A stretch of DNA of 64,000 nucleotides from contig NW_027361863.1 in the NCBI RefSeq assembly GCF_039654945.1, forward strand, positions 17,298,001 through 17,362,000. Direction: 5' to 3'. The DNA is from Dendrobates tinctorius. Its lineage: Eukaryota. Each line of letters opens with the position of its first letter. Position 1 is the stretch's first letter. The translations under genes and the position numbers were made by a program. Below, one piece after another: positions 1,641-43,299 of this stretch. Under the pieces are notes generated by a model. It was not told the DNA's origin, did not search any database, and saw nothing but the letters and a program-made list of their open reading frames with translations.

Positions 1641-1753
1641 ATGGCGGTAAGATAATTAACTACTTTTTCTTCTTTTAAGGAATTTTTCCTTATTGTTTCA
1701 TTTTTTCATTTTCATTTTTATTTTTTATTTTCTTTCATTCATTTTTCTATATA

Positions 1754-2701: not shown

Positions 2702-3702
2702 CATTGCTGCATGAACCAGTTAACAGTCTAAGTGTGTAAAAGTTCAGACACAGAGGGCTATTAAATGCATAAAGCATGTGAGAACATGATGCGAGGAACC
2801 TGGTTATGGTAAAAAAATTTTGAATGAGCCACACAGGGATATTTAGATTAATGTGTTGAGGCGGTAGGCCAGTCTGAATAAATGCATTTTCAGGGCACGC
2901 TTAAAATTGTGGGGATTGGGGACTAATCGTATTGACCTGGGAAGTGCATTCCAAAGAATTGGTGCAGCACATGTAAAGTCTTGGAGACGGGAGTGGGAGG
3001 TTCTGATTATTGAGGATGCTAACCTCAGGTCATCAGCAGAACGGAGGGCACGGGTAGGGTGGTATACTGAAACAAGGGAGGAGATGTAGGGTGGTGCTGA
3101 GCCATGGAGAGCTTTGTGGGTGAGGGTAATAAGTTTATACTGAATTCTGGAGTGGATGGGTAGCCAGTGTAATGACTGGCACAAGGTAGAGGCATCGGTG
3201 TAACGATTGGTGAGGAATATGATCCTGGCTGCAGCATTCAAGACAGATTGGAGAGGGGAGAGTTTGGTAAGAGGGAGACCGATTAGAAGAGAGTTACAAT
3301 AGTCGAGACGAGAATGAATAAGAGAAACAGTAAGAGTTTTTGCAGAGTCAAAAGTAAGAAAAGGTCGAATTCTAGAAATGTTTTTGAGGTGCAGATGACA
3401 AGAGCGAGCCAGTGATCGAATGTGGGGGGCAAAGGAAAGCTCGGAGTCAAGTATGACCCCAAGACAGCGGGCCTGTTGCTGGGGAGTAATAGTGGAGCCA
3501 CACACAGAAATGGCAGCGTCGGGTATAGGTACATTAGTAGCGGGAGGAAACACAAGGAGTTCAGTCTTTGACAGGTTCAGTTTCAGATATAGTGAGGACA
3601 TAATGTTAGACACAGCGTTTAGACAATCGCCAGTGTTTTCTAGAAAGGCTGGCGTGATGTCAGGAGAAGAAGCGTATAATTGGGTGTCATCAGCATAGAG
3701 AT
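2702..3702 (-). mobile_element. L2-clade LINE fragment (RT C-terminus plus part of 3' UTR)
   Basis: ORF 2843-3613 with [19 protein letters not shown] and LHWLPI; YADDTQLY near 3680-3700. Same family as the copies at 23081 and 27311. Confidence 0.92.
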
Positions 3703-5870
3703 GGTTAGTTATATATATATAGTAGTTATATTCTTGTACATAGGAGCAGTATTATAGTAGTTATATTCTTGTACATAGGGGCCGTACTATAGTAGTTATA
3801 TTCTTGTACATAGGGGCCGTATTATAGTAGTTATATTCTTGTACATAGGAGCAGTATTATAGTAGTTATATTCCTGTACATAGGGGCCGTATTATAGTAG
3901 TTATATTCTTGTACATAGGGAGCAGTATTACAGTAGTTATATTCTTGTACATAGGAGCAGTATTATAGTAGTTATATTCTTGTACATAGGAGCAGTATTA
4001 TAGTAGTTATATTCTTGTACATAGGAGCAGTATTATAGTAGTTATATTCTTGTACATAGGAGCAGTATTATAGTAGATATATTCTTGTACATAGGGGCAG
4101 TATTATAGTAGTTATATTCTTGTACATAGGGGGCAGTATTATAGTAGTTCTATTCTTGTACATAGGAGCAGTATTATAGTAGTTCTATTCTTGTACATAG
4201 GAGCAGTATTATAGTAGTTCTATTCTTGTACATAGGGGCAGTATTATAGTAGTTATATTCTTGTACATAGGAGCAGTATTATAGTAGTTATATTCTTGTA
4301 CATAGGAGCAGTATTATAGTAGTTATACTCTTGTACATAGGGGCCGTATTATAGTAGTTATATTCTTGTACATAGGGGGCAGTATTATAGTAGTTCTATT
4401 CTTGTACATAGGAGCAGTATTATAGTAGTTATATTCCTGTACATAGGGGCCGTATTATAGTAGTTATATTCTTGTACATAGGGAGCAGTATTACAGTAGT
4501 TATATTCTTGTACATAGGAGCAGTATTATAGTAGTTCTATTCTTGTACATAGGAGCAGTATTATAGTAGTTCTATTCTTGTACATAGGGGCAGTATTATA
4601 GTAGTTATATTCTTGTACATAGGAGCAGTATTATAGTAGTTATATTCTTGTACATAGGAGCAGTATTATAGTAGTTATATTCTTGTACATAGGAGCAGTA
4701 TTATAGTAGTTATATTCTTGTACATAGGGGGCAGTATTATAGTAGTTCTATTCTTGTACATAGGAGCAGTATTATAGTAGTTCTATTCTTGTACATAGGA
4801 GCAGTATTATAGTAGTTCTATTCTTGTACATAGGGGCAGTATTATAGTAGTTATATTCTTGTACATAGGAGCAGTATTATAGTAGTTATATTCTTGTACA
4901 TAGGAGCAGTATTATAGTAGTTATATTCTTGTACATAGGGGCCGTATTATAGTAGTTATATTCTTGTACATAGGGGGCAGTATTATAGTAGTTCTATTCT
5001 TGTACATAGGAGCAGTATTATAGTAGTTATATTCCTGTACATAGGGGCCGTATTATAGTAGTTATATTCTTGTACATAGGGAGCAGTATTACAGTAGTTA
5101 TATTCTTGTACATAGGAGCAGTATTATAGTAGTTCTATTCTTGTACATAGGAGCAGTATTATAGTAGTTCTATTCTTGTACATAGGGGCAGTATTATAGT
5201 AGTTATATTCTTGTACATAGGAGCAGTATTATAGTAGTTATATTCTTGTACATAGGAGCAGTATTATAGTAGTTATATTCTTGTACATAGGAGCAGTATT
5301 ATAGTAGTTATATTCCTGTACATAGGAGCAGTATTATAGTAGTTATATTCTTGTACATAGGGGGCAGTATTATAGTAGTTATATTCTTGTACATAGGAGC
5401 AGTATTATAGTAGTTATATTCTTGTACATAGAGAGCAGTATTATAGTAGTTATATTCTTGCACATAGGAGCAGTATTATAGTAGTTATATTCTTGCACAT
5501 AGGAGCAGTATTATAGTAGTTATATTTTTGTACATAGGTGCAGTATTATAGTTATATTCTTGCACATAGGAGCAGTATTATAGTAGTTATATTCCTGTAC
5601 ATAGGAGCAGTATTATAGTAGTTATATTCTTGTACATAGGGGGCAGTATTATAGTAGTTATATTCTTGTACATAGGGGGCAGTATTATAGCAGTTATAGT
5701 CTTGTACATAGGAGCAGTATTATAGTAGTTATATTCTTGTACATAGGGGGCAGTATTATAGCAGTTATAGTCTTGTACATAGTGGCAGTATTATAGTAGT
5801 TATATTCTTGTACATAGGAGCAGTATTATAGTAGTTATATTCTTGTACATAGGAGGCAGTATTATAGTAC
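3703..5870. repeat. 35-bp satellite (ATAGGAGCAGTATTATAGTAGTTATATTCTTGTAC), about 60 copies
   Basis: Direct tandem repeat visible in the sequence. Confidence 0.97.
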
Positions 5871-5915
5871 TATATATATACAGGACAGGAGGAGTAGTAC
5901 TGTGCAGTGTATATA

Positions 5916-7532
5916 CAGTGCCTTGCGAAAGTATTCGGCCCCCTGGAACTTTTAAACCTTTTCCCACATATCATGCTTCAAACATAAAGGTACCAAATGT
6001 AAATTTTTGGTGAAGAATCAACAAGTGGGACATAATTGTGAAGATGAATGAAATTTATTGGTTATTTTAAATTTTTGTGGAAAGTCAAAAACTGTAAAGT
6101 GGGGCGTGCAATATTATTTGGCCCCTTTACTTTCAGTGCAGCAAACTCACTCCAGAAGTTCATTGTGGATCTCTGAATGATCCAATGTTGTCCTAAATGA
6201 CTAATGATGATGAATATAATCCACCTGTGTGTAAGTCTCCGTATAAATGCACCTGCTCTATGATAGTTTCAGGGTTCTGTTTGATGCACAGAGAGCATCA
6301 TGAAGACCAAGGAACACAACAGGCAGGTCCGTGATACTGTTGTGGAGAAGTTTAAAGCCGGATTTGGATACAAAATGATTTCAAAAACTTTAAACATCCC
6401 AAGGAGCACTGTGCAAGCGATCATATTGAAATGGAAGGAGTATCATACCACTGCAAATCTACCAAGACCCGGCCGTCCCTCTAAACTTTCATCTCAAACA
6501 AGGAGAAGACTGATCAGAGATGCAGCCAAGAGGCCCATGATCACTCTGGATGAACTGCAGAGATCTACAGATGAGTTGGGACAGTCTGACCATAGGACAA
6601 CAATCAGTCGTACACTGCACAAATCTGGCCTTTATGGAAGAGTGGCAAGAAGAAAGCCATTTCTCAAAGATATCCATAAAATGTGTCATTTAAAGCTTGC
6701 AACAATCCACCTGGGAGACACACCAAACATGTGGAAGAAGGTGCTCTGGTCAGATGAAACTAAAATCGAACTTTTTGGCAACAATGCCAAACGATATGTT
6801 TGGCGTAAAGGAAACACAGCTCATCACCCTGAACACACCATCCCCACTGACAAGCATGGTGGAGGCAGCATCATGGTTTGGGGCTGCTTTTCTTCAGCAG
6901 GTACAGGGAAGATGGTAAAAATTGATGGGAAGATGGATGGAGCCAAATACAGGACCATTCTTGAAGAAAACCTGTTGGAGTCTGCAAAAGACCTGAGACT
7001 GGGACGGAGATTTGTCTTCCAAGACAATGATCCCAAACGTAAAGCAAAATCTACAATGGAATGGTTCACAAATAAACGTATCCAGGTGTTAGAATGGCCA
7101 AGTCAGAGTCCAGACCTGAATCCAATCGAGAATCTGTGGAAAAAGCTGAAAACTGCTGTTCACAAACGATCTCCATCTAATCTCACTGAGCTCGAGCTGT
7201 TTGCCAAGGAAGAATGGGCGAGAATTTCAGTCTCTCGATGCACAAAACTGATAGAGACATACCCCAAGTGACTTGCAGCTGTAATCGCAGCAAAAGGTGG
7301 CGCAACAAAGTATTAAGTTAAAGGGGCCGAATAATATTGCACGCCCCACTTTTCAGTTTTTTAATTTCCACAAAAATTTAAAATAACCAATAAATTTCGT
7401 TCAACTTCACAGTTGTGTCCTACTTGTTGATTCTTCACCAAAAATTTACATTTGGTATCTTTATGTTTGAAGCAAAATATGTGGGAAAAGGTTGAAAAGT
7501 TCCAGGGGGCCGAATACTTTCGCAAGGCAGTG
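5916..7532 (+). mobile_element. Full-length Tc1 (DD34E) transposon with ~210-bp TIRs and TA TSD
   Basis: TA|CAGTGCCTTGCGAAAGTATTCGGCCCCCTGGAAC ... GTTCCAGGGGGCCGAATACTTTCGCAAGGCAGTG|TA, enclosing a transposase ORF. Confidence 0.97.
6300..7271 (+). CDS. Tc1 transposase, 323 aa, with a premature stop shortly before the normal C-terminus
   Basis: Paired-like HTH, GRP motif, WSDETK / QDNDPK / SPDLNPIE with 34 residues between D and E. After the TGA the frame continues LAAVIAAKGGATKY*. Confidence 0.93.
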   Translation: MKTKEHNRQVRDTVVEKFKAGFGYKMISKTLNIPRSTVQAIILKWKEYHTTANLPRPGRPSKLSSQTRRRLIRDAAKRPMITLDELQRSTDELGQSDHRTTISRTLHKSGLYGRVARRKPFLKDIHKMCHLKLATIHLGDTPNMWKKVLWSDETKIELFGNNAKRYVWRKGNTAHHPEHTIPTDKHGGGSIMVWGCFSSAGTGKMVKIDGKMDGAKYRTILEENLLESAKDLRLGRRFVFQDNDPKRKAKSTMEWFTNKRIQVLEWPSQSPDLNPIENLWKKLKTAVHKRSPSNLTELELFAKEEWARISVSRCTKLIETYPK

Positions 7533-11400: not shown

Positions 11401-13591
11401 AATACCATACCTCATAGCCCACTTTGATGCCCATTTTTGTGCTAGCCTTCTAATTTTTTTATCTGTTTTTAAGTGTATTCAAAAAAGGACACATGATTGC
11501 ATATTATTATATACTTAGAATGTTTTATTTTTATTGAAAAACCTGAAAAAAAACAAAACAAAACCCAAGTTTCGAAAATAATTTGTACTTTCTGTTTTTT
11601 TCTGTCACATTATTAAAAATTATTATAAAAAAAGCCATTAGGTCTTCATCCAGCATCATCAAGAAGATGAAAGTCTATAAATTTAGAAATAATAACAGCA
11701 GACATCTTTGAGTGTAGTGTGGTCTTTTCAGATGCATCCGGATTATCAACGACCAAAGGGGCGGCAAATTTTTCGACCGCCCCGGGCGCCACAAACAGTT
11801 GCTACGCCACTGGCTCTGCCCCTCTGTCTGTCATGTAGGGCTTACTGCATCACCATCTGGCCTAGTCCTGGGGGCGGTCCTAATTACATCACCAGTCCGG
11901 GAACCTGTGAAGGATGACCTGATCCCTCAAATACCTTGGGACTGGTCTTGCAAGTGGCCGGATATATTCTTGGTTCTGCTGCGTGCTACTGTGTGAATTG
12001 CTATAGTTAATGCTGCCCTCAGCCTGGATTTCTGACCATTCTATTGCCTGCCGTTTTTGTACCTCCACCTCTCTTCTGATTTTTTGACACTGACCTTCGC
12101 TTGGATTCCTGACCCTTCTGCTGCCTGCTGATTCAGTACCTTTGCTGCTCTCCTGGTTTTACTGACCTTGGCCCGGACTTTTGACTCTTCTTCTGCCTGC
12201 TGATTTTGCACCTCTGCTGCCCTCCGGCCTCCGACTCCTGCCTCCTGACCACGATTACGGGTTTTAGTTTTAACCCCTTGGCGGCAGTCCTGCTCTGGTC
12301 CACTGCTCCACCAGACAGCTACCCCCTGGGCCTTGCTACAATTCCAGATCCCTGTATAGGGTTTAAGGGTCTCGGGGTTACTCGGGGTGCTGTTCCTACT
12401 GCAGCCCAGATTCGCAGATGGCCATCAGTTACTTTGAGTATCATACAGACTTCTGACTGCTACGAATAATAAATACAATTAAATTATACTTCGTTATATT
12501 TTTCTGATATGGCAGTCTTTATATTAATTTTTGCATTTTCCAGACGAGAGGGAAATGCGATCCAGATAAAATGGGACAAGTTCAGGGAACCTCCGTCACT
12601 CCTATCATGGTGGAATCCATGGACAGAAGATCTATCGTACATCAACCTGATCCAACACCCTGGAAACCCAGAAGATAAAGACTTGAGAGCTATGTGTCAG
12701 GTAAGACATTCTCCCTCCTTCCATCCTTCATATCCTCTGAGTTGGATCATATGAGGAAGCAAAACAAAGAACAAGGATCCACAGAAGCACAGAGTATTTC
12801 AGGAGAGAATCGGGCCAGTGATCACCTGTACTCTTGAGTGGTTAGGTGAGTGAAGGCTGCCTGGGGAAAACGGATGATGTGAAGGTGAGAACGGAAACAA
12901 ATGGGATGTAAAGACTGAGATAATAGAGGGGGCAGGGTTGTACCGCAGCACAGAGTATTTCAGGAGAGAGTAGCAATTGTGCAATTATGTAATTAAAGAC
13001 GGGGGGGGGGGGGGGAATGTGAGGCGAGGAGATGAATGATCTGAAGGTAAGAATGGAAACAAACCGGAGGTTAAGATCAAGATCTACATAATGGCAGGAG
13101 CATGGCCTTAACAGCAGCACAGAGTGTTTAAAGAGATATTCTCAAAAGTTAAGACCTGTGATTACATTGGTGAAGAAAGGCAAAGGGAGATAATAGGGGG
13201 TCCCATTCATAATCCATGTCTCCCCCGCAGTAGATTATTTTTAGAATATATAGTGCTTATATATAAAAAAAAAAATAATAATAAATGAATTTCAGGAGCT
13301 GATCCGGTGTGACCAAAGAAGTTGGACAGGAAGGGGAGCGGAGAAAGAGGAGGCACAGAGGATCCATATTATCCGTTTCTTCTTCTCTTCTTTCAGCCGG
13401 AGAAATTCATGGAGCAGCTGGTGGAGATGGTGAAGCTGGCACACGAACGCAGCCCCCTCCCTGGTCATGCCAATGGCCTGATGGTCCTCCAGAGGCCTGT
13501 GACCATAGATACGTCCATCGGACTTGTCTCGTTGATTAACAAAAAGGTCCAGTTGGGCTACGCCAAGCCTCGATGGGGGTTTGGATTCTGA
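8292..13591 (+). CDS. TPRG1/TPRG1L (Mover)-family protein, 263 aa; join(8292-8462,8795-8886,9211-9387,12544-12700,13397-13591)
   Basis: Five GT-AG exons with compatible phases, 792 nt in total. The protein has YFIFRP..QQAV.EI, HWGTERE, LLICYYDF, LNKREG..IQIKWDK, WNPW, PLPGHANG and KVQLGYAKPRWGFGF, colinear with TPRG1L/TPRG1. Orthology is uncertain, so no symbol is given. Confidence 0.9.
8795..8886 (+). CDS. TPRG1-like exon 2
   Basis: cag|PTVVQQAVHEIQSHLSPEEDGNTRSTWILA|gtaag. Confidence 0.88.
9211..9387 (+). CDS. TPRG1-like exon 3
   Basis: cag|MSHWGTEREV..LLICYYDF..PKMALN|gtaagt. Confidence 0.9.
9466..10022. repeat. 57-bp tandem repeat, about 10 copies, each with a minus-strand CTCF-like motif
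   Basis: Unit CTTATCATGTATCTCTGTATACAGGGAGCTCCCCCTAGTGGTGGCTGCAGACAGGAT; the reverse complement contains CCACTAGGGGGAGC. Confidence 0.93.
10057..10310. repeat. GC-rich ~63-bp repeat, 4 copies, each with a plus-strand GGCCACT(A/G)GGAGG motif; start of a GC-rich, probably retroelement-derived segment (to ~10830)
   Basis: GGCCACTAGGAGG(G/C) at ~10098, 10161 and 10225, and GGCCACTGGGAGGCACC at ~10288. Confidence 0.75.
10905..11560. mobile_element. Palindromic non-autonomous DNA element (MITE/foldback)
   Basis: Long inverted arms (~10905-11170 versus ~11290-11560) containing AAGGGGTTAA/TTAACCCCTT. Confidence 0.8.
11829..12430. mobile_element. Possible degenerate solo LTR
   Basis: Starts TGTCA; has pyrimidine-rich internal repeats (TGACC..CTGCCTG) like frog Gypsy LTRs. 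Ends are not resolved. Confidence 0.35.
12544..12700 (+). CDS. TPRG1-like exon 4
   Basis: cag|REGNAIQIKWDK..WNPW..AMCQ|gtaag. Confidence 0.9.
13397..13591 (+). CDS. TPRG1-like exon 5 (terminal)
   Basis: cag|PEKFMEQLV..GYAKPRWGFGF*; AATAAA at 13594-13599. Confidence 0.9.
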   Translation, partial: PEKFMEQLVEMVKLAHERSPLPGHANGLMVLQRPVTIDTSIGLVSLINKKVQLGYAKPRWGFGF

Positions 13592-14180
13592 GCAATAAAC
13601 CTTCTATGAAGACGACCACTACTAGAGTAGTACGACCACGAGGGCAGATGTGGACACCGGACCGCCCGCATCGCCGCTCTGCTATTCCACTGTGACCTAT
13701 GAGCTTCCTATTAAAAGATGGAGTTTGTAATAAATAATATCCGCAGTGATACATTGTAGCATCCCAATGGCACAGACCACTCTGCAGGGGTTGAGGGGGG
13801 ATTAATATCTAAAGGGGTTTTGTTTATTAAAAAAGGAAAGGTTTCTCAGTTATCTTCCTACTTGGTGCATCAAAGCTTCACTTTTTTCATAATCACTGCT
13901 TGTTGTTAGTGAATGGTAACATCCACCTTTACATCCAGAGGGTGAGAACTACTCCTGACCGGGTCTCGAAAAGACACTGATCAGACTTTGCTACATAGAA
14001 ACTATCAGCCGGTTCTTAAAGGGGTTGTTTCATACAAAAAAAATAAAAAAAATAAAATATCTTTTAAGACATTTAATGTAGTAGGAGCGTCCGCTGTTCT
14101 GAATCCTCGTCTGCCAACTTGAGGAGAAACTAGATAAACGGAGTCGCTCGCTCTGGAGGACGCATCACATCCATGCATTA

Positions 14181-14486
14181 GGGTGTGTGCACACGCTGCG
14201 GATTCTGCTGCGGATCTGCAGTGGTTTTGGCCCTGCGGATCTGCAGCAGAATTAGCTGCGTTATACAGTACCATTATATCCTATGGAAAATGGAAACTGC
14301 AGTGCACACCGTGCGGAATTTTCCGCTCGGTTTTTGTTGCGGTTTCCAATCCGCAGAAAGAATTGACGTCATTCTTTTCTGCGGATTCCGCTGCGGTTTG
14401 TCATCTCCTCCATTGTGGAGATGAAAAACCGCAGGGCAAAACCGCAGGCTAATCCGCAGACCAATCCACAGCGTGTGAACATAGCC
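14181..14486. mobile_element. PIF/Harbinger-type MITE, TTA TSD
   Basis: TTA|GGGTGTGTGCACACGCTG ... CAGCGTGTGAACATAGCC|TTA, with internal CCGCA/TGCGG repeats. Confidence 0.85.
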
Positions 14487-14789
14487 TTACCCAGGCAGCA
14501 TGCTGGAAAACATGTCATTCTTCATTTCCCCACTGGTGGCACTGCGGCTAAAAGGAGCACTCGCTGCTATGTTCCATAATGATTACACCTGATCACCTAG
14601 ATGGGTTTAAGTCGGGGTCAGATAGCAATATGCAATGGCCGGATGGACACAGAGCAAACGCACAGCCTCATGAACAGTATACACGTGTCTGATCCCACCC
14701 GACAACATGTACAAAAAGTTAGATGCAAAAATAGAAAAAGTGATTGAACGTTTAAGTTTGAAGTTGTTTCATTGATTCTCTCCTCTTTT

Positions 14790-15990
14790 CTGCAGTTGTT
14801 ACATAGATTCTTCTTTGATTTTACAGTTTTTCTTTCCTTTTTGCAGTTGTTTATTCCCTCTTCTATGCAATTGTTACATTGTTTCTTTCCGCTTTCCTGC
14901 AGTTGTTACATTGTTTCCTCTTTCCTGCAGTTGTTACATTGTTTCCTCTTTCCTGCAGTTGTTACATTGCTTCTTTCCTCTTTCCTGCAGTTGCTACATT
15001 GTTTATTTCCTCTTTCCTGCTGTTGCTACATTGTCTCTTTCCTGCAGTTGTTGCATTGTTTCTTTCATCTTCTCTGCAGTTGTTACATTGTTTCTTTCAT
15101 TTCTTCCTTCAGTTGTTACATTGTTTCTTTCATCTCTCTGCAGTTGTTACATTGTTTCTTTCCTGCAGTTGTTAGTGTTTTTTTTTTCCTCTTTCCTGCA
15201 GTTGTTACATTGTTTCTTTCCTACAGTTGTTGCATTGTTTCTTTCCTCCTTTTTCTGCAGTTGTTACATTGTTTCTTTCCTGCAGTTGTTACATTGTTTC
15301 TTTCATCTCTCTCTCTCTGCAGTTGTTACATTGTTTCTTTCATTTCTTTCTTCAGTTGTTACATTGTTTCTTTCATCTCTCTGCAGTTGTTACATTGTTT
15401 CTTTCCTGCAGTTGTTAGTGTTTCTTTCCTCTTTCCTGCAGTTGTTACATTGTTTCTTTCCTCTCTCTCTCTCTGCAGTTGTTACATTGTTTCTTTCCTC
15501 TTTCCTGCAGTTGTTACATTGTTTCTTTCCTGCAGTTGTTACATTGTTTATTTCCTCTTTCCTGCAGTTGTTACATTGTTTCTTTCCTGCAGTTGTTAGT
15601 GTTTCTTTCCTCTTTCCTGCAGTTTTTACATTGTTTCTTTCCTGCAGTTGTTACATTGTTTCCTCCCTCTTTCCTGCAGTTGCTACATTGTTTCTTTCTT
15701 GCAGTTATTAGTGTTTCTTTCCTTTTTCCTGCAGTTACTACATTGTTTCCTCTTTTTTTCTGCAGTTGTTACATTGCTTCTTTCCTGCAGTTGTTACATT
15801 GTTTATTTCCTCTTTCCTGCAGTTGTTACATTGTTTCTTTCCTCTCTCTCTCTGCAGTTGTTACATTGTTTCTTTCCTCTCTCTCTCTCTCTCTCTCTGC
15901 AGTTGTTACATTGTTTCTTTCCTCTTTTTTCTGCAGTTGTTACATTGTTTCTTCCCTCTTTTCTGCAGTTGTTACATTGTTGCTTCCCTC
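14790..15990. repeat. ~25-35-bp variable tandem repeat (CTGCAGTTGTTACATTGTTTCTTTCCTCTTT) directly upstream of P3H3 exon 1
   Basis: Roughly 35-40 units by eye. Confidence 0.95.
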
Positions 15991-16145
15991 TGTGTCTTAG
16001 GTTCTGTGCCCCCCAGTCCTCCTCCACGTCGCTCCTCACCTGCCCCCTCTCCTCCTCCTCCTCTCCCCTCTCCTCCTCCTCCTCCGGTTGGGAATGTCAG
16101 CAGTGGCCGGGCCTCTCCTCCCTGCTTCCCCGGCTGCCCCCCAGC

Positions 16146-16511
16146 ATGCAGGCCCCTCTCCTGCTCCTCAGCCTGGGGCTGGTGCACGCTGTGACTCTGC
16201 AGCCCCCCGATGAGTTGCTCTGGGATGGGGTCTCTCTGTTTTCCAGGGGAGAGTGGTCGGAGGCCCGGGACAAGTTGCGGGGGGCGCTGCGGAGCCTGCG
16301 GGAGGTGCGGGGCGTGCGGCTGAGGTGCGGGGAGGAATGCGGGCTCCGAGGGGCCCAACTGGAGGAGGCGGTGATGGAGCGAGCGGACTGTCTGCTGAGC
16401 TGCGAGCGCCTGCAGCTGGGGGAGCCCTCCCTGTACCGCCTGACCCAGGACACGGAGAGGACCTTCCGCAAGGGGGCGCCCTACAACTACCTGCAAGTGG
16501 CCCACTACAGG
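16146..16511 (+). CDS. P3H3: P3H3 exon 1
   Basis: [26 protein letters not shown]|gtgag. Confidence 0.92.
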
Positions 16512-19500
16512 GTGAGACGGGGCGACTGATGGGGCAGGGTGGTCTGCATGGTGGAGATGCCATAGTCTGCAGGACATGCCATGACACTGGGGCAATAGTC
16601 TGCAGGACATGCCATGACACTGGGGCAATAGTCTGCAGGACATGCCATGACACTGGGGCAATAGTCTGCAGGAGGGTGCAGTGACACTGGGGCAATAGTC
16701 TGCAGGAGGGTGCCATGACACTGGGGCAATAGTCTGCAGGAGGGTGCCATGACACTGGGGCAATAGTCTGCAGGAGGGTGCCATGACACTGGGGCAATAG
16801 TCTGCAGGAGGGTGCCATGACACTGGGGCAATAGTCTGCAGGAGGGTGCCATGACACTGGGGCAATAGTCTGCAGGAGGGTGCCATGACACTGGGGCAAT
16901 AGTCTGCAGAGGGGGGCCATGACACTGGGGCAATAGTCTGCAGGAGGGTGCCGTGACACTGGGGCAATAGTCTGCAGGAGGGTGCAATGACACTGGGGCA
17001 ATAGTCTGCAGGAGGGTGCCATGACACTGGGGCAATAGTCTGCAGGAGGGTGCCATGACACTGGGGCAATAGTCTGCAGGAGGGTGCCATGACACTGGGG
17101 CAATAGTCTGCAGAGGGGGGCCGTGACACTGGGGCAATAGTCTGCAGGAGGGTGCCGTGACACTGGGGCAATAGTCTGCAGGAGGGTGCCGTGACACTGG
17201 GGCAATAGTCTGCAGGAGGGTGCCGTGACACTGGGGCAATAGTCTGCAGGAGGGTACCGTGACACTGGGGCAATAGTCTGCAGGAGGGTGCCGTGACACT
17301 GGGGCAATAGTCTGCAGAGGGGGGCCATGACACTGGGGCAATAGTCTGCAGGAGGGTGCCGTGACACTGGGGCAATAGTCTGCAGGAGGGTGCCATGACA
17401 CTGGGGCAATAGTCTGCAGGAGGGTGCCATGACACTGGGGCAATAGTCTGCAGGAGGGTGCAATGACACTGGGGCAATAGTCTGCAGGAGGGTGCCATGA
17501 CACTGGGGCAATAGTCTGCAGGAGGGTGCAATGACACTGGGGCAATAGTCTGCAGGAGGGTGCCATGACACTGGGGCAATAGTCTGCAGGAGGGTGCCGT
17601 GACACTGGGGCAATAGTCTGCAGGAGGGTGCCATGACACTGGGGCAATAGTCTGCAGGAGGGTGCCGTGACACTGGGGCAATAGTCTGCAGGAGGGTGCC
17701 GTGACACTGGGGCAATAGTCTGTAGGAGGGTGCCGTGACACTGGGGCAATAGTCTGCAGGAGGGTGCCGTGACACTGGGGCAATAGTCTGCAGGAGGGTG
17801 CCGTGACACTGGGGCAATAGTCTGCAGTCCAGGACTGGGTCCCATGTGTGGGCAGATTGCTTTGCATGCAGGCAGTGTGTAGCTGGCTGTCAGGGATGCA
17901 ATACTCTGCAGGGTAGGGAAAGGTAATCTACAGCTCTGGGTGTGATGATCTGCAGTTGGTCCCAATGATGCTGGCATCACACTGATGGAGACATGTGATA
18001 GTCTGCAGTCCAGGCTTGTACCCTGCAGCCAGAGCGTCTGGGGAAATGCAATGGTCTGCAGGGAATCATGGATACTTTACTGAGGGGGTCCTATCCACAA
18101 ATGCCGGATTTTGGGTACAGATGTGGCAGCTCTCGGGTTCTGGATGCCATCAGTGTATTATGTTTGGTACAATGCAATACTCTGCAGAAAGAAGATGAGA
18201 CTATGGAGGGGTGAGTGACACCTCAATGTCTCATTCTTTGCTGGTGGTGAGTTTTGGAAGCTGTCTAGGAAAATTATCCAAGGGGTTAACTACCCAGAAT
18301 GCATTGCTGCTATGTAGGGGCTTGCACACGTGGCTGTGTATATGGCGGAGGATGGGGGGAGGCGCCATCTGTTTATGGAGACAGAAAATAAAACAAAATG
18401 TAAAAAAGTAAAATCTACAAGAATCAGCCAAATAGGAAAAAAGCACCCACATAGGCTGGAGCGTCTCGGAGTAAATATCTGCTCGCTAGTCACTTCTATT
18501 CTCTTCTGTCCAGTAATTAAAACCTCATCCAACCATTTCATTTCGGGGAAAGCCGAGTATTATCACCATTCACCTGGATTTTGACTCCTGAACATTTTCA
18601 GGTTTGTGTTTGAGTCTGAGAGATCTGGGGGAATCCTGTATCCGACCTGGAAGGACCATTGTCATCCAACTTTCCCAGAAACAGATATTAAGTAACAAAT
18701 GGCTGCAATGAATTTATAGCTTGTTGACCGGTAGGAAGAACACATGAGCTCAAGTGTAAGTGGGTGGGGTAACATTGACTCTAGGTCCTGGTGGGATAAC
18801 ATTGGCTCTAGGTCCTGGTGGGATGTGGGATAACATTGGCTCTAGATCCTGGTGGGATAACATTGGCTCTAGGTCCTGGTGGGATGTGGGATAACATTGG
18901 CTCTAGATCCTGGTGGGATGTGGGATAACATTGGCTCTAGATCCTGGTGGGATAACTTTGGCTCTAGATCCTGGTGGGATAACATTGGCTCTAGATCCTG
19001 GTGGGATAACATTGGCTCTAGGTCCTGATGGGATGTGGGATAACATTGGCTCTAGATCCTGGTGGGATAACATTGGCTCTAGGTCCTGGTGGGATGTGGG
19101 TTAACATTGGCTCTAGATCCTGGTGGGATGTGGGATAACATTGGCTCTAGGTCCTGGTGGGATATCAGTGGATCTAGGTTATGGTGAGATGTGGGATAAT
19201 ATTGGCTCTAGGTCCTTGTGGGATAGCATTGGCTCTAGGTTCTGGTGGGATAACATTGGCTCTAGGTCCTGGTGCTATGTTGGGTAACGTTGTTTCTTGG
19301 TCCTGCAGGGATGTGGGGTAACAATGTGGGGTAACATTGGATTTAGGACCTGATGGGATGTAAAGTAACATTTGCTTAGGTCCCGGAGGGCTGGAGATAT
19401 CGTTAGCTCTAGACTCTAGTAGTATGGAGGTGTTATTGGTCTAGGTTCTGGTATGACGCATATATGACTCTAAAGTGTTGTGTGATGGAGGCATCATTGG

Positions 19501-22500
19501 CTCTAGGTCAAAGACAGACACAGACAAATGAAGGTCCCCGAGCAAGAACAGTATGAAGGTCCCCGAGCAAGAACAGCATATGGGCCATTTGCAGCCCAAT
19601 GTGTCTGTGACATAAGTTTCTTTGGAGGTGGAGGTGGCCTCTCGACATTTTAAGCCCTTGTGAGGATGCACAAGTTGCACCAATGGTGTGTCCACCCCTG
19701 ATCTAGATTCTGGTGGGATGGAGTAATCAGTAACTCTAGGTCATGGTGACATGGAGGTATCATTGGCTCTAGGTCCTGGAGGGATGAAGGCATCATTGGG
19801 TCTAGATTCTGGCTGGATGGAGGCATCATTGGCTCTAGATTCTGGCAGGATGGTGGAGCCATTGGCTCCTAGATTCTGGATGGATGGATGGAGACATCAT
19901 TGGCTCTAGATTCTGGCTGAATGGAGGAGTCATTGGCTCTAGATTCTGGATGGATGGAGGTGTTATTGGCTCTAGATTCTGCAAGGATGGAGGTGTCATT
20001 TTCTCTAGATTCTGGCTAACTGTATAGAGATGTCGTTGGCTGTAGATTCTGGCTGAATGGAGGTGTCATTGGCTCTAGATTCTGGATGGATGGAGGCGTC
20101 ATTGGCTCTGGTTTCTGGCTGGCTGGATGGAAGCATCGTTGGCGCTAGATTCTGGCTGGATGGAGCTGTCATTGGCTCTAGATTCTGGTTGGATGGAGGC
20201 ATCATTGTCTCTACTTTCTGGATGATGGAGCTGTCATTGACTGTTGATTATGGATGGATGGGAGGGGTCATTAGCTCTAGATTCTGGATGGATGGAGATG
20301 TCATTGGCTCTAGATTCTGGCTGCATGGAGCTGTCATTGGCTCTAGATTCTGGCTGGATGAATGGAGGCATCGTTGGCTCTAGATTCTGGATGCATGGAG
20401 GTGTCATTGGCTCTAGAATCTGGCAGGATGGAGGAGTCATTGGCCCTAGGCTCTGGCAGGATGGAGGCATCATTGGCCCTAGGCTCTGGCAGGATGGAGG
20501 CATCTTTGGCCCTAGGCTCTGGCAGGATGGAGGCGTCTTTGACCCTAGGCTCTGGCAGGATGGAGGCGTCTTTGGCCCTAGGCTCTGGCAGGATGGAGGC
20601 GTCTTTGGCCCTAGGCTCTGGCAGGATGGAGGCGTCTTTGGCCCTAGGCTCTGGCAGGATGGAGGCGTCTTTGGCCCTAGGCTCTGGCAGGATGGAGGCG
20701 TCTTTGGCCCTAGGCTCTGGCAGGATGGAGGCGTCTTTGGCCCTAGGCTCTGGCAGGATGGAGGCGTCTTTGGCCCTAGGCTCTGGCAAGATGGAGGCGT
20801 CTTTGGCCCTAGGCTCTGGCAGGATGGAGGCGTCTTTGGCCCTAGGCTCAGCAGGATGGGGGGCGTCTTTGACCCTAGGCTCTGGCAGGATGGAGGCGTC
20901 TTTGGCCCAAGACTCGGCAGGATGGGGGCGTCTTTGGCCCTAGGCTTTGGAGGAATGTGGAGTTTTAGTTTTGGTGGAGAAGACAACGGCTTTAGATTCT
21001 GATGGAGCTGAAGTCTAATTTCTGGTGGGATTGAGCTATGTCAGTTTTCCCCTCACTTTTCACAGCTGGAGGAGTTGGACGAAGCGGCTGCCGCTGCCTA
21101 CACTTTCTTTGTGAGGAACCCCCATCATGAACAGATCCAAGGTGATGTTACCCGGTACCGCACCATGAAAGGGGTTGAAGAACGAAGCTTCCGAGACCTG
21201 GAGGAGCCCCCGTACAAGGTAACAGCTGATACTACAAGTCACAGAGTTCCTCGTCCTCATTAGTATCCATTGCTCCTGTTTTTTCTTCTCCCGACTGACC
21301 ACCATAGTGTCCTCTTACCCCAGGCTCTCTTTGCCCAAGCGTTGCCTCTACTATCTCAGGAGCGTCCGACCACCGCTGTCCTGAGGCTGGAGGAGTCTCT
21401 GAGCTCCTGTCTGTCTACTCTTCATGATTGCCGGACCCTCTGTGAGGGATTACGAGAGCACGAGAATGAAACCCACCGAGACTTCCCCGAGGTCATTGCA
21501 GGTATCAGTAGATGTCTTCTCTGCCGGTCCGTGACCTTTAGTCTCCCTGTCTGTCTCTTTGTTCCTTTATATTGATGTTCACTCATGGGGTGACCCCAAA
21601 AATATGACTATAAACCGGTTTCCAAGGGTGATTTGCAGAATTTTGGAAGCTGCTTTGGTAAACGGGGGGGATCACTTTGCTCATTTGTGTGGCCGTTTTT
21701 TTTATTTTTGGGTGATCACCAATGTTTGTTCTCCCCCCCAGAATATTATTCTCGGGTCTTGCAGTGTAAGCAGCGATGCGCCCTAGAAGTGTCATTAACG
21801 CCGGGACAGAAGCGCTCCCCCCAGGACATCCTCGTATCTCATCTACAGCTGCTTCAGCGAGGATATTCCCAGCGTAAGTCGCCTTCTCTGGCTGTGCGCC
21901 ACCTTGTATTGTAAAAACTACAACTCCCAATATGTACTGATGGCTGCAGATCATCAAGGCATGCTGGGAATTGTAGTCTCAGACCCGTTCTCCCTCTTGT
22001 CCTTCTGTCTTTACAGTTGGGGCCTGGGAGTCGGCTGCGCAGATCGCACGGTCGCTACTACTTTTCCATCCACATAATGAGACCTTGGTGGAAACTCTCC
22101 GCGGATATGAGCAGAAACTGCAAAGTAAAAGTGAGATCAGAGCACGCGAGGTAATGACCGCGCTGTGAAAAAGTATGTGCCCCTTCCAGATGTCCCCAAC
22201 TGCGGCATGTTTGTCCCACGCATAGTATATTAATTGCATTATATGGCGAAAAGTGAGAACTGGTTGATTCAATGTGATCTCCACAAATCAATCTTGAAAA
22301 GAGGTGCTGCAGTATAAAGCATGGAGGAGGGGCAGATGATCAGCAGGAGCCTCTGATGAGACAGGGTGTGGATATCAGACTTTACCGGACAGTGCAGTAA
22401 GCTCGGGTCAAAGATCATCGCTGAGTTGGAACTGATCACCACAAGCTAGACTCGAAAAGCAAAGCTGCAGTATAAAGCATGGAGGAGGGACAGATCAGCA

Positions 22501-25500
22501 TGCAGAGTCTCCAGGGACAAAAGGGATGGATATCAGACTATGTCAAATTCTAATAGACCACGAAACTGAGCTGGAGGCACCGATCCCTCGACATCAATGA
22601 GAAAATCCACCCTCCTCTCAGTGTTTTTTTTTCTGTTAATGATGGAAAATTCCTTTAAATTTTCCCACTTTTTTCCCCATTCCTTTGGGCAATGTCGCTT
22701 GTTTCGAGGTTCTAGATTATGATTTGTGTCTTTCTTTGCAGAATATCGCGTCGTACGTGCGCCAGACGCTGTCGGAGAAGAAGCTGTTGTATTACGTCAT
22801 GGAGAACCTGGGCATCGACTTTCAGGATCCGGTCAGACACATTTATTCATTCATCGTTTATTTCAATGTTCCTTAATGCTCTTCCTGAGGATGTGGATAC
22901 AAATGAAAGGGTGTGCAAACTTTTGTGGTCTATGTAGCTCAGAAAAAGACCGATAAGAGTTACGAGCTCCTCCATTAGACCGTCAAAGCGAGCTCACTGA
23001 GTTTTTCTCAGTTAACCCATTCTGCAGCAATAGACAGTGCAATACAGAGGTTACAGAAGGCAAATGGTGCCACATTTTTAATAATAATAATAATAATAAT
23101 AACAATTTTGTTTCTATAGCGCCAACATATTCCGCAGAACTTTACATTATAGAGGGGACTTGTACAGACAATAGACATTACAGCATAACAATAATCACAT
23201 AGATCATAACTGATAACAAGAGGAATGAGGGCCCTGCTCGCAAGCTTACAGTCTATGAGGAAAGAGGTAGACACGAAAGGTGGGTGGTAACAATTGCTTT
23301 CATTGTTCGGCCCAGCCATAGTGTAAGAATCGAGTGTTCCTGTTGCTGCTTGAACCAGTTAACAGTCTAAATATGTAACAGTACAGACACAGAGGGCTAT
23401 TAAATGCACAAAGCATGTGAGAACATGATGCGAGGAACCTGGTTATAGTAAAAATTTAGAATGTGCCACACAGGGATAGATTAGGTAAATGTGTTGAGGC
23501 GATCGGCCAGTCTGAACAAATGCGTTTTTAGGGCACGCTTAAAATTGTGGGGATTGGCAACTAATCATATTAACCTGGGTAGTGCATTCCAAAGAATTGG
23601 CGTAGCACGTGAAAAGTCTTGGAGACGGGAGTGGGAGGCTCTGATTATTGAGGATGCTAACCTCAGGTCATCAGCAGAACTGAGGGCACGGGTAGGCTGA
23701 GACAAGGGAGGAGATGTAGGGTGGTGCTGAGCCATGGAGAGCTTTGTGGGTGAGGCTAATAAGTTTGTACTGGATTCTGGAGTGGATGGGTAGCCAGTGT
23801 AAGGACTGGTACAAGGTAGAGGCATCGGTGTAACGATTGGTGAGGAATATGATCCTGGCAGCAGCATTCAAGACAGATTGGAGGGGGGAGAGTTTGGTAA
23901 GAGGGAGACCGATTAGAAGAGAGTTACAATAGTCGAGACGAGAATGAATAAGAGAAGCAGTAAGAGTTTTTGCGGAGTCAAAAGTAAGAAAAGGTTGAAT
24001 TCTAGAAATATTTTTGAGGTGCAGATAACAAGAGCGAGCCAGTGATCGAATGTGGGGGACAAAGGAAACCTCAGAATCAAGTATGACCCCCAAGACAGCG
24101 GGCCTGTTGCTGGGGAGTAATAGTGGAACCACACACGGAAATGGCAATGTCGGGTATAGGTACATTAGTAGCGGGAGGAAACACGAGGAGTTCAGTCTTT
24201 GACAGGTTCAGTTTCAGATATAGTGAGGACATGATGTTAGACACAGCATTTAGACAATCACCGGTGTTTTCTAGAAAGGCTGGCGTGATGTCAGGAGAAG
24301 AAGCGTATAATTGGGTGTCATCAGCATAGAGATGGTACTGGAAACCAAATCTACTGATTGTTTGACCAATAGGGGCAGTGTACAAGGAGAAGAGGAGGGG
24401 ACCTAGAACCGATCCTTGAGGAACCCCAACAGTAAGGGGAAGGTGAGAGGAGGAGGAACTGGCAAAAGATACAGTAAAGGAGCGGTCAGAGAGCTAGGAG
24501 GGGAACCAGGAGAGAACGGTGTCCTTGAGGCCAATGGAATGGAGCATAGTGAGGAGGAGCTGATGATCCACCGTGTCGAATGATGAAGGGAAGATTAGAG
24601 ACAGGCCTATAGTTAGCGGCACAGTTTTGGTCGAGGGATGATTTTTTAAGTAGTGGATGTTTGATGGCATGCTTAAATGAGGAAGGAAAGATACCGGAAG
24701 AGAGAGAGAGGTTGAATATTTTTGTTAGGTGAGTGGTGACAGCAGGGGAAAGGGACTGGAGGAGATGTGATGGAATGGGGTCACTGGTGCAAGTAGTAGG
24801 GCGAGAAGATGCAAGGAGCCTGATCACTTCTTCATCGGTTACTGGTTCAAAATCAGAGAGTGAGCGAGATGCAGTGGGGGAGGGAGGACAGTGCATGGTA
24901 TGAGGGGATTGGGAGATAATTTCCTGTCGGATATGGTCAATTTTTTCTTTGAAATAATTAGCCAGATCGTCCGCATGGAGAGCCGTGGTTGGGGCCTGCA
25001 CTCTTGGGTTAAGTAGTGATTTTAATGATTTATAGCCCCAAACACATGTATTTAAGAAATAAAATAAAGTCTTCAAAGCTGTTCAACCCCTTTTAGATGC
25101 AAGTAATATACTTTTCTTTGAATTTTCCCTTTTTTTCCCAAGATCTTTCCTGGGTGTCAGTGAAAGGGAACATTTGTTCATGCTCCTGTTCGGACCTAAT
25201 ACTTCTCACAGCTGAGGGTTACTAACAGGCTGGGTTTCAATGATACATTTTTTCTCTGCACCGATACATTGTAGCAAACTATCAGCACAGGACATAATTT
25301 TGTGTTGCTGATGTGCTTAGTATATAACCCAGGGATCACTCCTTGGGATCATACGGGATTCTCAATGTTCGGACCCCCAGCGATCAGTAACTTAGTCCTT
25401 ATTTTATAAGTATTGCACAGTTGTGTGATTAACCCTTCTAGCCCCCCCAGCCAGAATATAAACAACGCCATTTTCTTCTCTGTGGCCGGTTCTTATCGAT

Positions 25501-41849: not shown

Positions 41850-42251
41850 CCTGATCCTGAGTTACATCCTGTATTATACTCCAGAGCTGCATTCACTATT
41901 CTGCTGGTGCAGTCACTGTCTACATACATTACATTACTGATCTTGAGTTACATCCTGTATTATTATACTCCACAGCTGCACGCACTATTCTGCTGGTGCA
42001 GTCACTGTGTACATACATTACTGATCCTGAGTTACATCCTGTATTATTATACTCCAGAGCTGCACTCACTATTCTGCTGGTGCAGTCACTGTGTACATAC
42101 ATTACTGATCCTGAGTTACATCCTGTATTATTATACTCCAGAGCTGCACTCACTATTCTGCTGGTGCAGTCACTGTGTACATACATTACTGATCCTGAGT
42201 TACATCCTGTATTATACTCCAGAGCTGCACTCACTATTCTGCTGGTGCAGT
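41850..42251. repeat. ~80-bp minisatellite (ACTGATCCTGAGTTACATCCTGTATTATACTCCAGAGCTGCACTCACTATTCTGCTGGTGCAGTC..), continuing at 49340-49600 beyond the Gypsy insertion
   Basis: Same unit on both sides of the LTR element. Confidence 0.93.
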
Positions 42252-43289: not shown

Positions 43290-43299
43290 CTCCCCCACC

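What the first reader, a model, noticed from the sequence alone, without database searches (positions are those of the whole stretch)
14790..15990. P3H3 promoter abuts a ~1.2-kb multimer of DMRT-consensus sites overlapped by MYB and SOX motifs
Seen: roughly 35-40 units of CAGTTGTTACATTGTTTC ending ~150 bp before the P3H3 ATG; the core is conserved while the pyrimidine spacers vary. Established: TTGTTACATTGTTTC fits the DM-domain (DMRT1) consensus TWGHWACAWTGTWDC at all positions, CAACTG (minus strand) is a MYB site and AACAATG is a SOX site. Inference: the array may be a gonad/germline enhancer or a DMRT sink acting on P3H3 or the TPRG1-like gene. This matters in frogs because DM-domain genes are central to sex determination.
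Basis: partly seen in the sequence, partly recalled or inferred. Interest (0 to 1): 0.72.

Follow-up and report, generated by a model that had tools for sequence, protein, structure and literature searches.

The report
Promoter-side minisatellite carrying DMRT-type sites
A frog gene for a collagen-modifying enzyme has a 1.2-kb tandem repeat just upstream, and most of its roughly 40 copies match the docking site of DMRT sex-regulator proteins very well. It behaves like the ordinary fast-growing repeats that fill this genome, and nothing shows that it is a selected sex-related switch.

Summary
Window 14761-15995 (+) is an imperfect minisatellite of 41 units of 25-45 bp. It ends 151-155 bp before the ATG (16146) of a leprecan/P3H-family exon 1.

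- **Motif match:** 23 units match TWGHWACAWTGTWDC exactly, against 0.04 expected. The core scores 21.1 of 22.95 bits on a matrix I built from the published DMRT1 SELEX sites. The DM-site claim is therefore sound.
- **No sign of selection:**
  - Changes hit DM-critical bases as often as other bases (p = 0.81).
  - Four units lost the site through a small deletion.
  - The 5' edge units are decayed.
  - A 243-bp block was duplicated recently (98% identical).
  - The "variable spacers" are slippage-prone CT tracts.
- **Relative:** In Litoria verreauxii the collinear position holds one copy reading ACG instead of ACA, which breaks the DM core. The same contig has no counterpart of the neighbouring 34-bp intron array.
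- **Background:** 24% of the window is tandem arrays. This scan has already filed many arrays carrying transcription-factor motifs elsewhere in this genome, but not this one.

The best reading is a lineage-specific minisatellite grown from a single upstream element, carrying the DM-type site passively (0.75). A DMRT-responsive enhancer remains possible (about 0.14). A DMRT sink is implausible on the numbers. Binding was not tested.

The parts
14761..14867 (+). Degenerate 5' edge of the array (units 1-4), with no usable DM-type site
   Evidence: Unit parse. The best PWM score per unit is 8.4 bits or less.
14868..15995 (+). Homogeneous body of the minisatellite (units 5-41). The basic unit is 25 bp, the common variant is 32 bp with an extra TCTTTCC, and some spacers carry (CT)n expansions. 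The + strand is 76% pyrimidine. The whole array (14761-15995) has one CpG in 1,235 bp.
   Evidence: On the DMRT1 matrix, 23 units score at least 20 bits, 28 at least 17 bits and 33 at least 14 bits. There are 23 exact IUPAC matches.
15071..15184 (+). Copy 1 of a recent higher-order duplication (243-bp step)
   Evidence: the repeat finder family D3: 15071-15184 and 15314-15427 are 98% identical.
15314..15427 (+). Copy 2 of the higher-order duplication
15166..15198 (+). First of four short-variant units (also at 15409, 15590 and 15702) reading TTGTTAGTG..., which lack the DMRT1-type core
   Evidence: PWM score below 0. The string AGTTGTTAGTGTTTC is identical to one published DMRT5 SELEX clone.
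15966..15995 (+). Last unit (41, ...TTGTTACATTGTTGC...), the orthologue of a single-copy element in Litoria verreauxii and the probable seed of the array
   Evidence: Alignment A2. The position is collinear, about 170-177 bp before the ATG in both species. The 15-mer is identical at 14 of 15 bases; Litoria has ACG where the window has ACA.
15996..16145 (+). GC-rich promoter and 5' leader with a (TCC)n tract at 16017-16085. RNA contigs rise steeply from about 16050-16110.
   Evidence: GC and CpG of 15996-16560; the X15 contig starts at 16083; X5 depth rises from 123 to 600 to 1342.
16146..16511 (+). Coding part of exon 1 of a leprecan/prolyl 3-hydroxylase family gene (122 codons, with the splice donor after 16511)
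   Evidence: PDB P3H1 8k0e, E = 8.7e-10. Atlas gives TPR_leprecan PF23557 at 0.95. Spliced loose ends at 16511 appear in runs X5 and X15. The Litoria orthologue P0001 is 86% identical.
16562..17827 (+). Second minisatellite (34-bp unit, 37 copies, 96% matches), starting 50 bp into intron 1. With the upstream array it leaves the promoter and exon 1 as a 570-bp island between two arrays.
   Evidence: The Litoria contig has no tandem array at this place.

Best explanation
This is a young, lineage-specific minisatellite. A single short element about 175 bp upstream of the start codon of a leprecan/P3H-family gene is still single-copy at the same place in the tree frog Litoria verreauxii. In the window's lineage it was copied head-to-tail by replication slippage and unequal exchange until it reached 41 units, or 1.2 kb. 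The amplified element happens to read as a near-optimal DM-domain (DMRT) site, so the array carries about 28 good sites passively. The array keeps being reshuffled, through block duplication and spacer slippage, and its units decay without regard to the DM-critical bases. Its most likely effect on the gene is passive. It pushes older upstream DNA 1.2 kb away from the promoter. It may also be bound opportunistically by DM-domain or SOX proteins in cells that express them. Shown here: the anatomy, the motif quality, the lack of a constraint signal, the single-copy orthologue, and the repeat-rich context. Inferred: the growth mechanism, the direction of the ACG-to-ACA change, and the absence of a selected function.
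For: 1. Anatomy typical of a minisatellite: units of 25, 32 and up to 45 bp, degenerate edge units 1-4, a homogeneous interior, TRF periods of 32/57/112, and a 243-bp block duplicated at 98% identity.
2. No constraint signal. Substitutions per column are 0.86 at the 7 DM-critical bases, 1.12 at the 8 semi-critical bases and 0.67 at the 3 flanking bases (Fisher OR 0.85, p = 0.81). Four more units lost the core through a small deletion, so 10 of 37 interior units carry a site-breaking change.
3. The variable spacers are CT-rich runs of up to 30 nt, including (CT)n, which is the expected substrate for slippage.
4. Comparison with Litoria verreauxii contigs L001 and L002. Exon 1 is 85.5% identical and the promoter 70%. 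The last unit aligns collinearly to a single copy reading TTGTTACGTTGTTGC, which scores 15.3 bits against 21.7 because its base at -1 was never selected in SELEX. The same contig lacks the 34-bp intron array, which shows that arrays at this locus turn over quickly (species from PMC12171712).
5. Context. 24% of the window lies in 21 tandem-array intervals, among them a perfect CRE array and CTCF-like arrays. 580 notes on tandem arrays with binding motifs exist for this genome. Frog genomes carry about 10% tandem arrays, attributed to unequal crossing-over in recombination-rich regions (PMC10794172).
6. Chance. About 540 exact IUPAC matches and about 90 sites as strong as the core are expected per 1.45 Gb, so a seed of this quality is not rare. 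Three other strong DM-type sites lie in this same window, two of them at the centre of a palindromic MITE-like element.
Against: The motif match is unusually good, at 21.1 of 22.95 bits. It is better than several of the SELEX-selected sites that I scored. About 28 such sites sit directly against a promoter, and a synthetic 4x array is enough for DMRT1-dependent reporter activation in HEK293T cells. [quoted passage not shown] The seed element is 14/15 identical between two distant frogs while the surrounding promoter is 70% identical, so the seed itself could be a conserved cis-element. The constraint test has low power, with 17 substitution hits. The Litoria contigs stop about 47 bp upstream of the single copy, inside unit-like sequence, so a diverged array in Litoria cannot be excluded. 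No binding, chromatin or tissue-resolved expression data could be examined.
Confidence: 0.75

Rival explanations
1. The array is a working DM-domain response element. In cells that express DMRT1 (Sertoli or germ cells) or another DMRT, about 28 closely spaced high-affinity sites are bound, chromatin opens, and transcription of the adjacent P3H-family gene (or the upstream neighbour) goes up or down. That would give a lineage-specific sex- or gonad-biased output.
For: The core scores 21.1 of 22.95 bits, with the invariant G at -6, T at -8 and ACAxTGT all present. There are 23 exact consensus matches against 0.04 expected. X. laevis DMRT1.S and DM-W bind this consensus in EMSA, and 4 tandem sites drive a DMRT1-dependent reporter (PMC6941857). 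DMRT1 is proposed to be a pioneer factor, and its motif overlaps that of SOX9 (PMC8216462). The array abuts the promoter.
Against: There is no constraint on critical bases, and 10 of 37 interior units carry site-breaking changes. The orthologous copy in Litoria lacks the A at -1. The half-site TTGTTAC occurs in 0 of 22 DMRT1, 12 of 40 DMRT3 and 9 of 49 DMRT5 SELEX clones by my count, so the factor cannot be assigned. There is a strong look-elsewhere effect in a genome full of arrays. I found no paper linking P3H3 functionally with DMRT1.
Confidence: 0.14
2. The array acts as a DMRT sink or sponge. It titrates DM-domain proteins away from other targets and so shifts the DMRT dosage thresholds that matter for sex determination.
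For: The sites are many, clustered and high-affinity. About 23 sites of at least 20 bits compare with only about 90 equally strong sites expected by chance per 1.45 Gb.
Against: About 28 sites per haploid genome is about 0.1% of the 29,659 sites co-bound by DMRT1 and SOX9 in mouse cells. By general knowledge it is also far below typical transcription-factor copy numbers. Known sponges are satellites with thousands of units or more. No copies of the unit were found elsewhere in the window, in the scan index or among ORF-derived proteins.
Confidence: 0.02
3. The array matters through properties unrelated to DM proteins. It may be a transcribed upstream leader or minor alternative start region, since every unit ends in a pyrimidine tract plus CAG and so resembles a 3' splice site or PTB-type binding tract. 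Or it may be a homopyrimidine, H-DNA-prone, nucleosome-disfavouring spacer that shapes promoter accessibility and local recombination.
For: Run X5 is shown to be RNA by a spliced end at 16511. It has contigs over 15667-15798 (depth 57, joined to adapter exactly at 15667) and 15907-16081 (depth 123), against 1342-6700 in exon 1. The + strand is 76% pyrimidine with runs up to 30 nt. The promoter is sandwiched between two arrays.
Against: Contigs cannot show strand, ends or true levels. The upstream signal is at most about 9% of exon-1 depth and is absent in run X15. No spliced joint into any unit was seen. The sequence features follow simply from what was amplified.
Confidence: 0.07

Closest known systems
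Frog minisatellites of recombination-rich regions (Bredeson et al. 2024, PMC10794172)
   Same: These are tandem arrays of tens-of-bp units, 1-2 kb long and densely packed (24% of this window). They differ between species and are attributed to unequal crossing-over. Some grow from a fragment of a pre-existing element.
   Different: Here the seed is a single-copy promoter-upstream element and not a transposon fragment. I could not place the window on a chromosome, so a subtelomeric location is not shown.
Other arrays carrying transcription-factor motifs that this scan filed in the same genome (CTCF-type, CRE, PBX-PREP, histone HDE arrays)
   Same: The pattern is the same: one short functional-looking word amplified head-to-tail, sometimes single-copy in other frogs. 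On follow-up they behaved like ordinary expanding repeats.
   Different: The motif class is different (DM domain), and the match to the consensus is unusually strong. The array sits directly against a promoter.
Synthetic 4x DMRT1-binding-site reporters (Yoshimoto 2010, as used in Ogita 2020, PMC6941857)
   Same: They are head-to-tail multimers of a DMRT1-consensus site placed in front of a promoter.
   Different: This array is natural, about 7 times more copies, with 25-45 bp spacing and T at -5 and +5 instead of A and G. Its activity is untested.
Izanagi transposon-borne Dmrt1 site in the medaka dmrt1bY promoter (Herpin 2010, PMC2820524)
   Same: A repeat element delivers a DM-domain binding site to a promoter.
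   Different: According to that paper's title and abstract, the repeat rewired regulation of the dmrt1 duplicate; I did not read its experiments. It is a dispersed transposon with a single site. Here the repeat is a tandem array of unknown effect next to a collagen-modifying enzyme gene.
Promoter-proximal human VNTRs such as the INS and HRAS1 minisatellites (from general knowledge, not checked here)
   Same: These are minisatellites beside promoters whose units bind transcription factors and can modulate expression with copy number.
   Different: For those, binding and allele effects were measured. Nothing of that kind exists for this array.

Membership tests
Minisatellite / VNTR | Head-to-tail units of about 10-100 bp forming an array of hundreds to thousands of bp | tested here: met
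   41 units of 20-45 bp over 1,235 bp.
Minisatellite / VNTR | Homogenised interior with decayed edge units and higher-order duplications | tested here: met
   Units 1-4 are degenerate and a 243-bp block is duplicated at 98% identity.
Minisatellite / VNTR | Copy number differs between related species or individuals | tested here: inconclusive
   Litoria shows one clear copy plus degenerate unit-like sequence before its contigs end. A ~97%-identical relative (run X14) has array-like units and the last unit. Contigs cannot give copy number or polymorphism.
DM-domain (DMRT1-type) response element | 13-bp pseudopalindrome G-N-W-ACA-W-TGT-W-N-C with G at -6 and a preferred T at -8 | tested here: met
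   TTGTTACATTGTTTC scores 21.1 of 22.95 bits on the matrix from 22 SELEX sites. There are 23 IUPAC matches.
DM-domain (DMRT1-type) response element | Bound by a DM-domain protein in vitro and in vivo | not testable with these tools
   This needs EMSA or BLI and ChIP or CUT&RUN. The only evidence is for the consensus with Xenopus proteins.
DM-domain (DMRT1-type) response element | Site integrity maintained by selection (conserved in orthologues, critical bases protected) | tested here: not met
   The Litoria orthologue has G at -1 and scores 15.3 bits. Changes in critical and other columns are equally frequent, p = 0.81.
Transcription-factor sink / sponge satellite | Number of sites comparable to the factor's genome-wide bound sites or molecule number | tested here: not met
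   About 28 sites against 29,659 co-bound sites in mouse cells. No further copies of the unit were found.
Leprecan / prolyl 3-hydroxylase gene (context) | N-terminal TPR_leprecan region after a signal peptide | tested here: met
   P3H1 8k0e, E = 8.7e-10. PF23557 clusters at 0.95. P0001 carries PF23557. Assignment to the P3H3 paralogue was not tested.

The most novel reading that the evidence does not exclude
In the window's frog lineage, tandem amplification of a conserved promoter-upstream element, after a CpG-to-CpA change completed the DM core, created a natural array of about 28 DMRT response elements. That array now places a collagen prolyl-3-hydroxylase-family gene under DM-domain, sex- or gonad-biased control. 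It would be a dated, step-by-step example of a new regulatory link born from a minisatellite.
Probability: 0.1. Interest if true: 0.65.

Novelty: new member of a known kind. Interest (0 to 1): 0.3.

Why it matters
As it stands, this is one more minisatellite in a repeat-saturated frog genome. The value of the follow-up is mostly cautionary: a perfect-looking multimer of binding sites can arise from amplification of one seed and needs no function. Two points keep it mildly interesting. First, the match to the DM-domain consensus is among the best possible, so the array is a ready-made natural reagent for asking whether DMRT proteins bind and open repeat arrays in vivo. Second, the single-copy orthologue in Litoria gives a clean before-and-after pair for testing whether amplification of a site changes gene expression. 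If the array did confer gonad-biased expression, it would show how tandem repeats can rewire regulation within one frog lineage.

Tried and rejected
1. I asked read laying for 13200-18200. Most of the array body, its 5' junction and the upstream gene's 3' end were therefore not examined with reads.
2. I looked for other copies of the unit and found none. The searches were the window at up to 4 mismatches, the scan index by sequence, and two protein-word searches with array ORFs of 298 and 75 aa. A full-text search for TTGTTACATTGT returned one unrelated Drosophila paper. All these blanks are weak evidence.
3. A literature search for DMRT1 with tandem repeats or satellites returned nothing relevant. 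P3H3 with DMRT1 returned one unrelated synteny mention.
4. A synteny check for the P3H3 paralogue call used Pfam on large ORFs downstream. It found only a decayed LTR retrotransposon, and the upstream gene's last exon gave no Pfam hit. The paralogue call and the 'TPRG1-like' label stay untested.
5. The spacers are CT microsatellite-like tracts, and the core's critical bases are not protected.
6. I rejected Xenopus as the source. The nearest public relative found is Litoria, and scan notes mention poison frogs. The genome-size-based chance figures (1.45 Gb) are therefore lower bounds.
7. The large representative-protein search was not used, because the operators flagged it as costly and no claim here rests on it.

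Full report
**What is there**

Window 14761-15995 on the + strand is an imperfect tandem array. Tandem Repeats Finder reports it as 14762-15991 with periods of 32, 57 and 112 bp. I split it at the recurring CAGTT anchor and obtained 41 units.

- Units 1-4 (14761-14867) are decayed.
- Units 5-41 share the plan CAGTTGTTACATTGTTTC, then a CT-rich spacer, then CTG.
- The basic unit is 25 bp. The common variant is 32 bp and repeats TCTTTCC. Some units carry (CT)n runs and reach 45 bp.
- The 18-base core is exact in 20 units and occurs nowhere else in the window at up to 4 mismatches.
- The + strand of the array body is 76% pyrimidine and 53% T. The array (14761-15995) has one CpG in 1,235 bp.
- The array stops 151-155 bp before an ATG at 16146.

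**The gene next to it**

The ORF from 16146 encodes the N-terminal TPR-like region of the leprecan/prolyl 3-hydroxylase family.

- It matches P3H1 chain 8k0e at E = 8.7e-10.
- Atlas clusters carrying PF23557 TPR_leprecan score 0.95.
- Two runs of the same organism (X5 and X15) contain contigs that leave the window at 16511 and continue with the same non-genomic sequence. These runs are therefore RNA, and exon 1 ends at 16511.
- RNA contig depth rises steeply between about 16050 and 16110. The X15 contig starts at 16083.
- In X5, contigs also cover 15907-16081 (depth 123) and 15667-15798 (depth 57, joined to adapter exactly at 15667), against 1342-6700 in exon 1.

This hints at minor transcription through the last 330 bp of the array. 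Contigs cannot show strand, ends or true levels, so it stays a hint.

I did not test whether the gene is the P3H3 paralogue, nor whether the upstream gene is TPRG1-like. That gene has a stop at 13591 and AATAAA signals at 13594 and 13729, and its last exon gave no Pfam hit.

**Is the DM-domain reading of the core right?**

Yes. Murphy et al. 2007 (PMC1931443) list the 22 oligonucleotides selected by mouse DMRT1. I counted them into a 15-column matrix.

- The best possible site is TTGATACATTGTTGC at 22.95 bits. The array core TTGTTACATTGTTTC scores 21.1 bits.
- The core has the preferred base at 13 of 15 positions, including the invariant G at -6, the ACA/TGT arms and the T at -8.
- Per unit, 23 score at least 20 bits, 28 at least 17 bits and 33 at least 14 bits. 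Eight have no site.
- Frog proteins recognise the same consensus. X. laevis DMRT1.S and DM-W shift it in EMSA, and four tandem copies drive a DMRT1-dependent reporter (PMC6941857).

Two qualifications apply.

- The left half-site TTGTTAC occurs, by my count, in 0 of 22 DMRT1 clones, 12 of 40 DMRT3 clones and 9 of 49 DMRT5 clones. One DMRT7 clone shares 16 bases with the unit. The short variant unit is identical to a DMRT5 clone. The motif therefore cannot be assigned to DMRT1 or to sex determination specifically.
- The SOX match is not independent, because the DMRT1 and SOX9 in vivo motifs are very similar and often coincide (PMC8216462). CAACTG is a 6-mer that is also an E-box.

**Is there any sign that the sites are maintained?**

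No.

- Among the 33 interior units with a full-length core, substitutions per column are 0.86 at the seven bases that are invariant or nearly so in SELEX. They are 1.12 at the eight semi-constrained bases and 0.67 at the three flanking bases. Fisher's test of critical against other columns gives OR 0.85, p = 0.81.
- The critical G at -6 is lost in units 30 and 34 and also in short-variant unit 33. The A at -3 is lost in two units and the T at +3 in two.
- Four units carry a small deletion that removes the core.
- In all, 10 of 37 interior units have a site-breaking change.

Mutation explains it. The spacers are homopyrimidine tracts of up to 30 nt, including (CT)n, and these change length by slippage far faster than a complex core changes by substitution.

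The array also shows the usual marks of ongoing unequal exchange. The 5' edge is decayed, 25- and 32-bp units alternate to give 57- and 112-bp periods, and a block at 15071-15184 is repeated at 15314-15427 with 98% identity.

**Comparison with relatives**

A word-based protein search with the exon-1 ORF found one relative, P0001, at 86% identity. It is encoded on two Logan contigs (L001, L002) from runs that belong to the Litoria verreauxii alpina genome project (PMC12171712).

- The alignment gives 85.5% identity in exon 1 and 70% in the promoter.
- At the collinear position, about 170 bp before the ATG against 177 bp in the window, Litoria has a single copy of the unit, AAGTTGTTACGTTGTTGCTTTCC. 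It aligns to the window's last unit. The 15-mer is 14/15 identical.
- Litoria has G at -1, a base never selected by DMRT1, so its score is 15.3 bits against 21.7.
- Because CpG-to-CpA is the common mutational direction, the DM core may have been completed by CpG decay before amplification. That is an inference and needs an outgroup.
- Upstream of the single copy Litoria has only degenerate unit-like sequence. Both contigs end there, so a diverged array further upstream cannot be excluded.
- The same contig shows that the homogeneous 34-bp array in intron 1 of the window (16562-17827) has no tandem counterpart in Litoria. Arrays at this locus therefore turn over quickly.
- A much closer relative, run X14 at about 97% identity, does have the last unit joined to the promoter, plus other array-like contigs.

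**Background and chance**

- Twenty-one tandem-array intervals cover 24% of this window.
- The promoter and exon 1 form a 570-bp island between two 1.2-kb arrays.
- For this genome the scan index holds 580 notes fitting 'tandem array binding motif'. The follow-ups shown all concluded that the arrays were ordinary expanding repeats, including one CTCF-type site that is single-copy in other frogs and amplified in poison frogs.
- Bredeson et al. 2024 report 10.67% of the X. tropicalis chromosomes in tandem arrays. They attribute expansion to unequal crossing-over in recombination-rich regions and note the same landscape in other frogs (PMC10794172).
- A seed site of this quality is not rare. About 540 exact IUPAC matches and about 90 sites as strong as the core are expected per 1.45 Gb, and more in a larger genome.
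- Three other strong DM-type sites (16-20.6 bits, against 0.25 expected) lie in this window. Two of them sit at the centre of a palindromic MITE-like element. DM-like palindromes thus arise here by several non-regulatory routes.

The 23 matches trace to one amplified seed. Given how many motifs a reader can recognise, finding some array with a consensus-grade site is expected.

**Mechanism and rivals**

| Reading | Confidence |
|---|---|
| Lineage-specific minisatellite grown from a single upstream element, carrying a DM-type site passively | 0.75 |
| DMRT-responsive element affecting the adjacent gene | 0.14 |
| Effects through transcription of the array, its 3'-splice-site-like units or its homopyrimidine structure | 0.07 |
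| DMRT sink | 0.02 |

- **Best reading.** The growth mechanism is slippage and unequal exchange. The main consequence for the gene is spacing, plus possible opportunistic binding.
- **DMRT-responsive element.** This rival is real but untested. The sites are excellent, closely spaced and next to a promoter, and DMRT1 may open chromatin.
- **Sink.** This is implausible on the numbers. About 28 sites compare with 29,659 sites co-bound by DMRT1 and SOX9 in mouse cells, and no other copies of the unit were found.
- **Array transcription or structure.** This rests only on the weak RNA hint.

**Limits**

- All reads evidence comes from contigs of coded runs, and only 15640-16560 could be laid.
- The matrix comes from mouse DMRT1 SELEX and was counted by hand.
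- The comparison rests on one distant and one close relative.
- The species of the window is not known to me.
- No binding, chromatin or tissue-resolved expression data were available.

**Verdict**

The regulatory inference is neither supported nor excluded. This is a new member of a known kind: a promoter-side frog minisatellite carrying a transcription-factor site. It is made somewhat more interesting by the quality of the DM match and by the single-copy orthologue, which allows a clean test.

Noticed in passing
window 25205-25360 and 33440-33600 (DM-type sites at 25261-25277 and 33495-33511): Two copies of a ~150-bp palindromic MITE-like element with terminal inverted repeats CTTCTCACAGCTGAG / CTCAGCTGTGAGAAG. 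Each has a strong DM-type palindrome (GATACATTGTAGC or GATACATTGTAAC, 17-20.6 bits on the DMRT1 matrix) at its centre. A dispersed repeat family may therefore scatter DM-like sites through this genome.
   Followed up: partly
window 13746-13762: A third strong DM-type site (GTGATACATTGTAGC, 16-18 bits) lies directly after the AATAAA at 13729, downstream of the upstream gene's stop codon (13591).
   Followed up: no
window 16562-17827, compared with L001 640-1070: A very homogeneous 34-bp minisatellite (37 copies, 96% matches) starts 50 bp into intron 1. Litoria verreauxii has no tandem array called at the same place (TRF found none). Together with the upstream array it leaves the promoter and exon 1 as a 570-bp island between two arrays.
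   Followed up: partly
window 15667 (run X5): An RNA contig of k-mer depth 57 joins Illumina adapter sequence directly to position 15667 inside the array. This could be a discrete minor RNA end or only duplicate fragments.
   Followed up: no
window 42744-46559 (-), with 84-86-bp tandem repeats at 41851-42251, 49340-49620 and 60406-61062: A decayed LTR retrotransposon with integrase, RNase H and reverse-transcriptase ORF fragments on the minus strand. Related tandem-repeat blocks lie on either side of it, and a third block lies further on. I observed it only.
   Followed up: no
window 6300-7271 (+): An intact-looking 323-aa ORF that looks like a Tc1/mariner-type transposase by eye (no family search was run). 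It lies upstream of the neighbouring gene.
   Followed up: no
window 32417-32686: A tandem array whose 24-bp unit contains the perfect CRE palindrome TGACGTCA. This is another consensus-grade transcription-factor word inside a minisatellite in the same window.
   Followed up: no
window 16335: Both RNA runs (X5, X15) read C where the window has G in exon 1, at full depth. This is probably a strain or individual difference.
   Followed up: no
window 18763-20943, compared with L001 1920-2015: The intron-1 arrays with units containing CATTGGCTCTAG have a recognisable counterpart at the end of the Litoria contig (two copies of ATCATTGGCTTTA-like units). This repeat family at the locus is therefore older than the two arrays that flank exon 1.
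   Followed up: no
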